Below are positions 23,107 to 28,203 of a DNA stretch of 32,000 nt, one piece after another (position 1 is the stretch's first letter; each line of letters starts with the position of its first letter). The notes under the pieces are model-generated. The model was not told the DNA's origin. It did no database searches and saw only the letters and a list, made by a program, of their open reading frames with translations. The stretch is taken from assembly GCA_000002455.1 (NCBI GenBank), contig DQ158857.1:60001-92000 (forward strand). Reading direction: 5' to 3'. This DNA comes from Bigelowiella natans nucleomorph. Taxonomy: Eukaryota; Protista; Cercozoa. Made by a program: the position numbers and the translations under genes.

Positions 23107-23734
23107 TTAAATTATTTTATCGATTATGCCATAGTTTAAAGCTTCGACCGATGTCATATGAAAAGGCCTTGTCATATATGATGTTATTTCAGTTGGATGT
23201 CTCATCGTGTGTTTGCTAAATATATTAATCTATTAATATTTCATATACAATTAAATTGTTAAACTTGTATAGTTCTGATTTTTTAATACCTATGTCACTT
23301 GTCTGTGAGGAGCCAATTGAATTCATAAAAACATCAATATACAATAAGCTAGATGGTAAAGCATATCTGTAGTCCTGATTAAAAAAAATTTACTTTACTT
23401 CCATAACTACTGATAAGGCACATTTCATTAAAAGCAATTCCTAGAACTAAAGTTGAAAGTTTTGATTTCATGCTGTTAATAATATCATGCATGCTAATAA
23501 TCTGGTCATAACGTGAAAATAGATTATAATACTATTGAATAATATTTAACCGAACTACCTTTACCATTTATATATAAATTTATGGTTTCATTACTATTTT
23601 TATTTTTTAAGTATAAAATAGTAGAAATAAAAGATTTTGTACTATTAAAATCGATTTCAGTAGACTATTAATCAAAAAAGTACTAAATACAGAATATTTT
23701 TTTCTAGTAAAAATGTAGAGTAGTTAGAGCTCAT
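23107..23734 (-). CDS. clpR: ClpR-like non-catalytic Clp protease subunit, ~183 aa
   Basis: Four 19-nt introns. INLYINGKGSS, STLVLGIAFNE, RYALPSS, QTSDIGI, IFSKHT and MTRPFHMTSVEALNYGIIDKII. The triad Ser/His/Asp positions read Asn/Asp/Pro. Absent from the ORF track. Confidence 0.88.
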
Positions 23735-26682: not shown

Positions 26683-26797
26683 AAAAAAAATAAACAATAA
26701 CAGTTTGAATTATAAATTAATTGAATGAATAACCATAAAATAAGTAATTTAATTTTTACCTTAAATATTAGTTTACTTCACGGCTTTTATTGTTATT

Positions 26798-27818
26798 ATG
26801 AAATACTTAAAAATCGAAAAATTTCATTCTCTTCGAGGAGCAAGAATAAGTCATCTAAACAAAAAAAAATTACCAATAATAATGTTAAAAGTAAATTGGA
26901 AAGTTAATGATATATTAATAGGATGGAACTTATAGCTGGTAAAAATTATGGGTAAAGGGAAGATTCAAAAAATGTATCTGTCGATAGTTTGAAAAAGTTT
27001 GAAGATAACATTATGTTAAATTTCGATAAGGTATAATACTATTCATAAGAATAACAAGTCTCTACAAAGATTAATATTGAATAACTCTCAATTAATACCT
27101 TTTATTGTAAATGAACAACAGAGAAAGTATACTCTATTATTTTTAGCATAAATCATTTTTCACCGATTTTAAAAGACTTGGTATTAGCTAATATAACGAC
27201 AAAAATTGGATCCTCTTCGGATTTTCCTGACTTTCAGAGTTCAATTAGCTATTTATAGATAGAAGTCCTATTGATATCGCTCTCAACTACGATCAGTTAG
27301 ATCTTTTGAAAATGTACCTATCATCGATAGAGGCTCTTAATTCTGATGTTAATAACTATAGAAAATATCTGGTTTTGTGCAAAACAAAAGGAATTAATTT
27401 GTTTTCAGAGCCGCAATTTCAAAATGAATCTTCACAATTTAGATATATTAAAACATTAAAAGTGGTTTATAATTGGTTTTTTGAAACCTTATATATAAGA
27501 AATTTCGACTATGCCCTTGAAAAAAATAAAATTACTTATCTTCTAATGAATAATAATGAAAAGGATAGTAATCATTTTTGGACTACTTCAGAATCCACAG
27601 AAAATTCAATTTTACTTAAAACTAATAAAGATCTTAATATTCATTATAATTACATAACTTTTTCACGAAGAAAAAAAAACAATGAAAACTATCACCTAAT
27701 TTATAACGAAAAACTAAAAAATAAAATATGGATAAATGCACCTGAAAATTCTAAAGCAATATTTAGTTCTGAATTTAAGATGAAAATGAAACTACTATCC
27801 CAAAGCTTCTTAATTTAA
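26798..27818 (+). CDS. cpSRP43 (chloroplast SRP 43-kDa subunit)-like chromodomain/ankyrin protein, ~307 aa
   Basis: Introns 26903-21, 26939-57, 27031-49, 27127-46 and 27239-58 give CD1 (LRGAR...VNWKDGTYSWEDSKNVSVDSLKKFED), ankyrin-like repeats, then two degenerate chromodomain-like units. Confidence 0.72.
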
Positions 27819-27827
27819 ATTTAGTAA

Positions 27828-28203
27828 TTATAAATGATTATAACCCAAACTAACTAAGATATCCTCAGTTTCAGTTGTGTTATAGAAGCTTACAAGAACC
27901 TTTTTTTTGTTATCGAATCTTATTCAATTTAGGTTACGTGTTTAGCGAATTGATTTTTTTTATTTTGGTATCTAGAAGATTTTCTAGTAAATTCTTGACA
28001 TTTTTCTTACTAAATCTTTTGTCAATCCTAAAAGTCTATAAAAATATTTAAACAATAGTATTATAGTTTTTAATCAGGAATCTTGATTTTTGAGATATTT
28101 CCAATTTAATATCGTAAAAAGTAGGTTCTTTTAAATAATTTTTAAATATAAGTGAGATTTGGATTTTATTTTGTTTATATTTTCTAATTATTTTATTTTT
28201 CAT
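27828..28203 (-). CDS. rpl23a: 60S ribosomal protein L23a (uL23)
   Basis: Introns of 18 and 19 nt. YNTITFRIDKRFSKKNVK...KKINSLNTFDNKKKVLVSF matches uL23 NTLVF.VD...K..IK...KVNTL...G.KKAYV. Confidence 0.85.

What the first reader, a model, noticed from the sequence alone, without database searches (positions are those of the whole stretch)
26798..27818. Hidden, highly diverged cpSRP43-like gene in a nucleomorph
Seen: five 19-20-nt introns join an unlisted frame to ORF 27306, giving ~307 aa. Exons 1-3 read FHSLRGAR...VNWKDGTYSWEDSKNVSVDSLKKFED. Next come VNEQQRNINHFSPILKDLVLANITTKIGSSSDFPD and NRSPIDIALNY, then QF...FFE and two units of the form YLL...W and YHL...W...EN. Established: plant cpSRP43 is chromodomain 1 (IIGSR...IEWKDG..SW...D....YE), ankyrin repeats (VDENGRTALLF...L....GADLD..D; TALHMAAGY), then chromodomains 2 and 3. 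It is green-lineage specific and delivers LHC proteins to Alb3. Inference: the relict nucleus still encodes the LHC chaperone. I do not recall it among commonly listed chlorarachniophyte nucleomorph plastid genes, so it may be annotated only as an ORFan.
Basis: partly seen in the sequence, partly recalled or inferred. Interest (0 to 1): 0.9.

Follow-up and report, generated by a model that had tools for sequence, protein, structure and literature searches.

The report
Nucleomorph orphan gene is leaderless cpSRP43
A gene long listed as an orphan in the tiny relict nucleus of chlorarachniophyte algae is the gene for cpSRP43, the chaperone of light-harvesting proteins; it adds an 18th plastid-related gene to a list fixed at 17, and the protein lacks the usual plastid address tag.

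Summary
Confirmed and extended. The window is Bigelowiella natans nucleomorph chromosome 2. The five 19-20-nt introns are real: a transcriptome protein of 307 aa holds every exon piece, and an intronless contig skips all five. RefSeq lists the gene as hypothetical BNATCHR2105 (248 aa, missing chromodomain 1), a published shared ORFan. Orthologues occur in about nine chlorarachniophyte-type sequences (dN/dS 0.11 in one pair). Orthology with green cpSRP43 rests on independent lines: profile-profile match (98.3%, E 1e-14, collinear over 273 columns); Foldseek top two PDB hits are cpSRP43; and all five introns sit at the same codon and phase as in Volvox cpSRP43 (chance about 1e-11). The LHC-binding tyrosine (Arabidopsis Y204 = Y132) is invariant. 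Differences: no transit peptide in any orthologue (greens: median 65 residues), chromodomains 2-3 eroded and not significant alone, net charge flipped from acidic to basic. Best reading: an LHC chaperone, probably stromal; periplastidial action is the live rival. Alb3 docking is not shown. No paper found linking cpSRP43 to nucleomorphs; host nucleus not testable.

The parts
26798..27818 (+). cpSRP43 orthologue gene, 6 exons, 307 aa (RefSeq BNATCHR2105 covers only 27013-27818)
26903..26921 (+). intron 1, 19 nt, codon 36 phase 0; same site in Volvox cpSRP43 and in L010
26939..26957 (+). intron 2, 19 nt, codon 41 phase 2 (inside the CD1 Trp codon); same site in Volvox, Trebouxia, Micractinium and L010
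27031..27049 (+). intron 3, 19 nt, codon 66 phase 0; same site in Volvox, Trebouxia, Micractinium and L010
27127..27146 (+). intron 4, 20 nt, codon 91 phase 2; same site in Volvox, Trebouxia and L010
27239..27258 (+). intron 5, 20 nt, codon 122 phase 1; same site in Volvox, Trebouxia and Micractinium
26813..27024 (+). chromodomain 1 (about residues 6-63), starting almost at Met1; G14, P26, W34, W41, E42, E56 invariant in 8 orthologues
   Evidence: hhalign 95.7%, E 8.9e-9 alone; three strands plus helix, pLDDT about 60-84
27050..27338 (+). ankyrin repeats 1-3 (about residues 66-148), with R90 (27122-27124, Arabidopsis R161) and Y132 (27288-27290, Arabidopsis Y204)
27339..27479 (+). two long helices in the Ank4 position (about residues 149-195); sequence diverged
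27480..27644 (+). eroded chromodomain 2 (about residues 196-250); W229 matches the CD2 Trp; the cage residues equivalent to W291/D293 are lost
   Evidence: register; three strands plus helix; intron right after this Trp shared by L010 and Trebouxia
27645..27794 (+). eroded chromodomain 3 (about residues 251-300), S257-R-R-K start and W279; strongly basic
   Evidence: not significant alone
26770..26783 (+). 14-nt upstream block identical in the second species but in a different frame relative to the ATG, so probably non-coding (promoter or UTR element); single exact copy in the genome
26062..26702 (+). upstream neighbour u2af1 (zf-CCCH/RRM); syntenic in L003/L004
27834..28203 (-). convergent downstream neighbour rpl23a (matched part); syntenic in L003 and L005

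Best explanation
The gene is the green endosymbiont's own cpSRP43 gene, kept in place in the nucleomorph with its ancestral introns shrunk to 19-20 nt (shown; about 0.99). It is expressed, spliced and under purifying selection (shown). Most likely it still works as the ATP-independent chaperone for the host-encoded LHC apoproteins. The CD1-Ank4 block folds as one unit, and the Ank2-4 groove clamps the LHC L18/DPLG loop around Y132 (Arabidopsis Y204), keeping the hydrophobic precursor soluble until thylakoid insertion (inferred from residue conservation and from published work showing that the ankyrin repeats suffice, PMC2898393). It probably acts without cpSRP54, as in chlorophytes (PMC5115805), which fits the loss of the CD2 cage. 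It is made on periplastidial ribosomes and most likely enters the stroma without a cleavable leader, perhaps using its basic N-terminus (inferred). Hand-over to Alb3 through CD3 may be weakened or rewired, because the acidic surface is gone (inferred).
For: A profile of two Bigelowiella-type sequences alone retrieves chlorarachniophyte-type orthologues and two green cpSRP43 proteins, with matches running from CD1 into the ankyrins, from 1.84 billion proteins (E 7.6e-5 and 1.5e-4). Nine orthologues against 59 green cpSRP43: hhalign 98.3%, E 1.3e-14, 273 nearly gap-free columns. An AlphaFold model built only from nucleomorph sequences shows bbb-a, helical repeats, bbb-a, bbb-a. Its best two Foldseek hits among 350,542 PDB chains are cpSRP43 3ui2 (E 3.4e-4) and 3deo. 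Five of five introns match Volvox cpSRP43 in codon and phase (P about 1e-11). Y132 is 8/8 in the family and 59/59 in greens; R90 is 7/8 and 58/59. dN/dS is 0.08 over residues 1-148 and 0.16 over 196-307. B. natans has 19 nuclear LHC genes as clients (PMC3542566). A missing leader does not exclude the plastid here: the accepted plastid genes cpn60 and one clpP also lack one.
Against: No transit peptide: 0-12 residues precede CD1 in 8 orthologues, against a median of 65 in greens, while dnaK, three clpP genes and ycf16 of this genome keep 20-65-residue leaders. The ankyrin consensus is decayed, with no Pfam Ank or Chromo hit in the B. natans-type proteins. Net charge is +10 to +25 against a green median of -29. 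The model is of low confidence (pLDDT 58, pTM 0.41). DPLG conservation in B. natans LHCs and the host-encoded partners were not testable.
Confidence: 0.55

Rival explanations
1. Same gene and same LHC-binding groove, but relocated. Having lost its transit peptide, it stays in the periplastidial compartment (the former algal cytosol) and shields LHC precursors while they cross from the second membrane to Toc75. CD2 and CD3 decay because cpSRP54 and Alb3 are not in that compartment.
For: Leader absent in all orthologues, with no in-frame upstream ATG in five loci with known upstream DNA. Conservation falls from CD1/Ank (46% and 30% identity within the family) to CD2/CD3 (18% and 17%). The acidic docking surfaces turned neutral or basic. 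Five of seven plastid-type nucleomorph genes checked keep leaders.
Against: cpn60 and one clpP are leaderless too yet are counted as plastid proteins. The basic shift is expected from AT bias and affects all domains. CD2/CD3 are still under purifying selection (dN/dS 0.16) and keep their length and Trp residues.
Confidence: 0.27
2. It is a cpSRP43 orthologue whose retained job is not LHC delivery but another client, for example stabilising tetrapyrrole-synthesis enzymes (a second role of plant cpSRP43, from my own knowledge, not checked here) or a lineage-specific partner.
For: Heavy divergence of Ank3-4 and CD2/CD3; family-specific invariant residues such as K31 that differ from greens. Euglenophytes run green LHCs with no cpSRP43 at all (10.1101/358895).
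Against: The LHC-binding tyrosine and the Ank2 arginine are among the best-kept residues.
Confidence: 0.13
3. It is a chromatin chromodomain-ankyrin protein (HP1/CBX or MPP8-like) working in the nucleomorph.
For: No plastid leader; basic N-terminus with KKK; the CD1 model resembles chromatin chromodomains structurally (7vrf Z 6.9).
Against: The CD1 profile hits cpSRP43 chains and no chromatin chromodomain in the PDB at E up to 10. Domain order, spacing and five intron positions are those of cpSRP43.
Confidence: 0.03
4. It is a decaying relic, functionally replaced by a host-nuclear copy.
For: Very long branch; host genome not searched.
Against: Open frame of 307-319 aa in every full-length orthologue, dN/dS 0.11, spliced transcripts, and retention across the group, including L. 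oceanica orf326 and A. amoebiformis BAS01911.1.
Confidence: 0.02

Closest known systems
Chlorophyte cpSRP43 (Volvox, Trebouxia, Chlamydomonas TLA3 type)
   Same: CD1-Ank1-4-CD2-CD3 order and spacing; chlorophyte-type CD1 loop Pro (P26) and the R..LH[FY] Ank2 motif; Y204 equivalent; five intron positions shared with Volvox and four with Trebouxia; no intact cpSRP54 cage, as in chlorophytes.
   Different: Encoded in a nucleomorph; no transit peptide; about 15% identity; basic rather than acidic; CD2/CD3 below detection on their own.
Arabidopsis cpSRP43 (CAO; PDB 3DEO, 3DEP, 3UI2, 5E4W)
   Same: Best structural match; R161 and Y204 equivalents kept; F267 equivalent mostly aromatic.
   Different: The CD2 cage equivalents of E268, W291 and D293 for cpSRP54 ARRKR are not conserved; acidic CD3 for the Alb3 tail is lost.
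[quoted passage not shown]
   Same: Retained across the group; mostly protein import, folding and thylakoid targeting functions.
   Different: Not on the list; a eukaryotic green-lineage invention rather than a cyanobacterial gene; annotated as shared ORFan BNATCHR2105/orf326.

Membership tests
cpSRP43 | N-terminal chromodomain CD1 fused by a helix to ankyrin repeat 1 | tested here: met
   hhalign of CD1 alone 95.7%, E 8.9e-9; model strands 9-43 and helix 49-63
cpSRP43 | Ankyrin repeats Ank1-4 after CD1 | tested here: met
   Family profile hits ankyrin/DARPin chains down to E 4e-6; Atlas features are ankyrin; collinear with green Ank1-4. Ank4 is matched by register and helices only
cpSRP43 | Ank3 tyrosine (At Y204) that binds the LHC DPLG motif | tested here: met
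   Y132 in 8/8 orthologues and 59/59 greens; numbering via 3DEO
cpSRP43 | C-terminal chromodomains CD2 and CD3 | tested here: inconclusive
   Correct register, Trp residues and two bbb-a units; shared intron after the CD2 Trp in L010 and Trebouxia; not significant alone: E 0.41, 5e4w rank 3 at E 0.2, no VIA match of Z 5 or more
cpSRP43 | Orthology with the green-lineage gene | tested here: met
   5/5 intron positions and phases shared with Volvox cpSRP43; Foldseek top hits; tree gives one long-branched clade, position among chlorophytes unresolved
cpSRP43 | Cleavable plastid transit peptide | tested here: not met
   0-12 residues before CD1 against a median of 65; no upstream in-frame ATG with 18-21-nt introns. 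A targeting feature rather than a feature of descent; lowers 'is a canonical stromal cpSRP43'
cpSRP43 (streptophyte type) | Twinned aromatic cage in CD2 that binds cpSRP54 ARRKR | tested here: not met
   E268, W291 and D293 equivalents not conserved; chlorophyte cpSRP43 does not bind cpSRP54 either (PMC5115805)
cpSRP43 | Binds LHC L18 and prevents aggregation | not testable with these tools
   needs biochemistry
cpSRP43 | Stromal location and docking on the Alb3 C-terminus | not testable with these tools
   CD3 net charge +2 to +12 against a green median of -6 argues against the usual docking; no Alb3, SRP54/FtsY or LHC gene detected in the nucleomorph
Chromatin chromodomain proteins (HP1/CBX, MPP8-like) | Best similarity to histone-binding chromodomains | tested here: not met
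   The CD1 profile finds cpSRP43 chains and no chromatin chromodomain in the PDB

The most novel reading that the evidence does not exclude
Chlorarachniophyte cpSRP43 has moved one compartment outward. Leaderless, it stays in the periplastidial space and chaperones host-made LHC precursors between the second and third plastid membranes, a relocation of a thylakoid-targeting factor fitted to four-membrane import.
Probability: 0.27. Interest if true: 0.85.

Novelty: new variant of a known kind. Interest (0 to 1): 0.63.

Why it matters
Nucleomorphs are argued to persist in order to express a fixed set of 17 plastid genes (PMC4494063). This adds an 18th candidate, conserved across the group, and it is a photosynthesis-specific green invention, so antenna assembly may depend on the relict nucleus. 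It names a shared ORFan and shows why it was missed: the annotation dropped the first chromodomain. Intron positions prove to be a strong way to identify ORFans at 15% identity. It also contrasts with euglenophytes, which lost cpSRP43. The family-wide loss of the transit peptide makes a clear question testable: leaderless import into a secondary plastid, or a chaperone relocated to the periplastidial space.

Tried and rejected
The joined splice model was not sent to any search tool. As the operators asked, I searched exon by exon by reference and then used database proteins that the tools returned with ids (P0005, P0008 and others). Joined translations were made only inside local scripts, to check frames and intron positions. 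Things that led nowhere: Pfam on single exons or whole B. natans-type proteins (only weak LolA, ACT and C39 hits, rejected as composition noise). Word-index homologue search, which found only the two closest species. cpSRP43 profile against the unspliced genome, no hit, so ordinary annotation misses it. The search for related loci in metagenomes. Read laying, contigs only and no joints. VIA wide search and Atlas shape search, dominated by helical bundles. Rfam around the gene, nothing credible. Upstream ORF 26725 as a leader: rejected, because it is out of frame, the DNA is confirmed by a contig, and the second species has no such ATG. A 28-nt intron (26744-26771) would give a 15-residue leader but lies outside the 18-21-nt size class and has no counterpart in L003. 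The Atlas top row 'T3SS effector EspL' is an ankyrin look-alike with few shared features and was ignored. Gilson 2006, Traeger 2012, Hirakawa 2012 and Koziol 2007 were not held, so prior mention there cannot be excluded.

Full report
Source and observation. The window lies at C2:60001-92000 of a 372,870-nt, three-contig genome. That size, and the 134,144-nt contig carrying the RefSeq protein, match the Bigelowiella natans nucleomorph (PMC4035089 table 1). Enumerating all 18-21-nt GT..AG introns between ATG 26798 and stop 27818 gives one minimal open model, with five introns and 307 aa. A search with exon 6 by reference found two clusters. Their members include an MMETSP protein of 307 aa (P0005) that contains every exon piece in register, and RefSeq hypothetical protein BNATCHR2105 (248 aa), which starts at Met60. 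An intronless Logan contig skips all five introns. The reads tool held only contigs and reported no joints, so it adds nothing on splicing. The joined model itself was not searched; later searches used database proteins by id.

A conserved family. A profile of P0005 and its 76% identical orthologue P0008, scored against 1.84 billion proteins, returned seven further AT-rich relatives. One is Amorphochlora amoebiformis BAS01911.1, annotated as hypothetical. The L. oceanica paper lists BNATCHR2105 as a shared ORFan (orf326) and gives 17 plastid-associated genes, none of them SRP43. The neighbours u2af1 and rpl23a are both kept in the second species; rpl23a also follows the gene in L005. Between the window and L003, dN/dS is 0.11 overall, 0.08 for residues 1-148 and 0.16 for 196-307.

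It is cpSRP43. (a) The same two-sequence profile also retrieved two green algal proteins, with matches running from the chromodomain into the ankyrins (E 7.6e-5, 1.5e-4). One has three Chromo hits plus Ank and matches cpSRP43 chain 3UI2 at E 1.7e-46. Generic ankyrin proteins scored through repeats only. (b) Nine nucleomorph sequences against 59 green cpSRP43 give hhalign probability 98.3, E 1.3e-14, over 273 nearly gap-free columns; CD1 alone gives 95.7 and E 8.9e-9. (c) AlphaFold on the nucleomorph alignment only (pLDDT 58, a modest model) predicts three strands and a helix, a helical block, then two more three-strand-plus-helix units. Its best Foldseek hits in the PDB are cpSRP43 3ui2 (E 3.4e-4) and 3deo. 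(d) Independently of sequence similarity, the introns at codon/phase 36/0, 41/2, 66/0, 91/2 and 122/1 coincide with five consecutive introns of Volvox cpSRP43; Trebouxia shares four and Micractinium three, while Pedinophyceae shares none and Bryopsis is intronless. The chance of five hits on eight Volvox sites among 921 positions is about 1e-11; proto-splice bias would soften this but not undo it. A distant chlorarachniophyte-type contig shares introns 1-4 and has another right after the CD2 Trp, where Trebouxia also has one. A tree of CD1-Ank3 gives one long-branched nucleomorph clade whose place among chlorophytes is unresolved.

What is kept and what is lost. Using 3DEO numbering (residues 85-267, PMC6244792), Y132 is Arabidopsis Y204, around which the LHC DPLG motif wraps, and R90 is R161. 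Y132 is invariant in the family and in all 59 greens; R90 is 7/8 and 58/59. Published work shows that the ankyrin repeats suffice for LHC chaperoning and CD2/CD3 are dispensable for it (PMC2898393). The C-terminal half keeps its length, register and Trp residues but is not significant alone (E 0.41; 5e4w third at E 0.2; nothing). The CD2 cage for cpSRP54 is gone, which fits chlorophytes, where the two proteins do not bind (PMC5115805). Net charge is +10 to +25 against a green median of -29, and CD3 is +2 to +12 against -6. Part of this is AT bias, but it questions docking on the basic Alb3 tail.

The missing leader. Eight orthologues have 0-12 residues before CD1; greens have a median of 65. 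No upstream ATG can be joined by an 18-21-nt intron, five loci show an in-frame stop or no ATG within 21 codons upstream, and a contig confirms the upstream DNA. As a control, dnaK, three clpP genes and ycf16 of this genome keep 20-65-residue leaders, whereas cpn60 and one clpP do not. So the lack of a leader is real and family-wide, but does not by itself exclude the stroma.

Mechanism. Shown: an expressed, spliced, constrained cpSRP43 orthologue. Inferred: it is translated in the periplastidial space and binds host-encoded LHC apoproteins (19 genes, PMC3542566) through the Ank2-4 groove and Y132, keeping them soluble without ATP and probably without cpSRP54. I put stromal action after leaderless import at 0.55, periplastidial escort at 0.27, another client at 0.13, a chromatin role at 0.03 and a relic at 0.02. 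Alb3, SRP54/FtsY and LHC genes were not detected in the nucleomorph (an exon-wise search can miss diverged genes). The host nucleus could not be searched.

Novelty. Full-text searches for cpSRP43 or SRP43 with nucleomorph gave no paper. Searches with chlorarachniophyte or Bigelowiella gave only incidental co-mentions, of which I read one. Several key papers were not held, so prior mention cannot be fully excluded. The family is known; its presence in nucleomorphs, its leaderless form and its identification with a published ORFan appear new. I rate it a new variant of a known kind, interest 0.63.

Noticed in passing
G000:C1, about 88179-88190, minus strand (locus L011): The nucleomorph cpn60, counted among the 17 plastid genes, has only about 3 residues before the GroEL domain; no leader can be built with 18-21-nt introns.
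   Followed up: partly
window 23107-23734, minus strand: A clpP-family gene starts essentially at the protease domain with no leader, unlike three other clpP genes that carry about 27-50 extra residues.
   Followed up: partly
window 26770-26783 and L003 about 2186-2199: A 14-nt block just upstream of the ATG is identical in two species whose intergenic DNA is otherwise diverged, and sits in different frames; candidate promoter or UTR element, single exact copy in the genome.
   Followed up: partly
P0025 (A. amoebiformis BAS01911.1), residues 66-71: The annotated protein has six extra residues at the intron 3 position compared with the transcript-derived P0010; probably an unrecognised in-frame 18-nt intron.
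   Followed up: no
L003, L004, L005: Intronless contigs of 3.5-5.6 kb carry five to seven genes on both strands, consistent with the overlapping transcripts of nucleomorphs being merged in assembly.
   Followed up: no
L010 716-734 and 852-870: This distant orthologue keeps two further 19-nt introns in the C-terminal half that B. natans lacks; one matches a Trebouxia cpSRP43 intron. Matching intron positions to green algal genes could identify other nucleomorph ORFans.
   Followed up: partly
window 27818-27834: The gene's stop codon lies 15 nt from the stop of the convergent rpl23a, and contig L002 runs across both genes.
   Followed up: no
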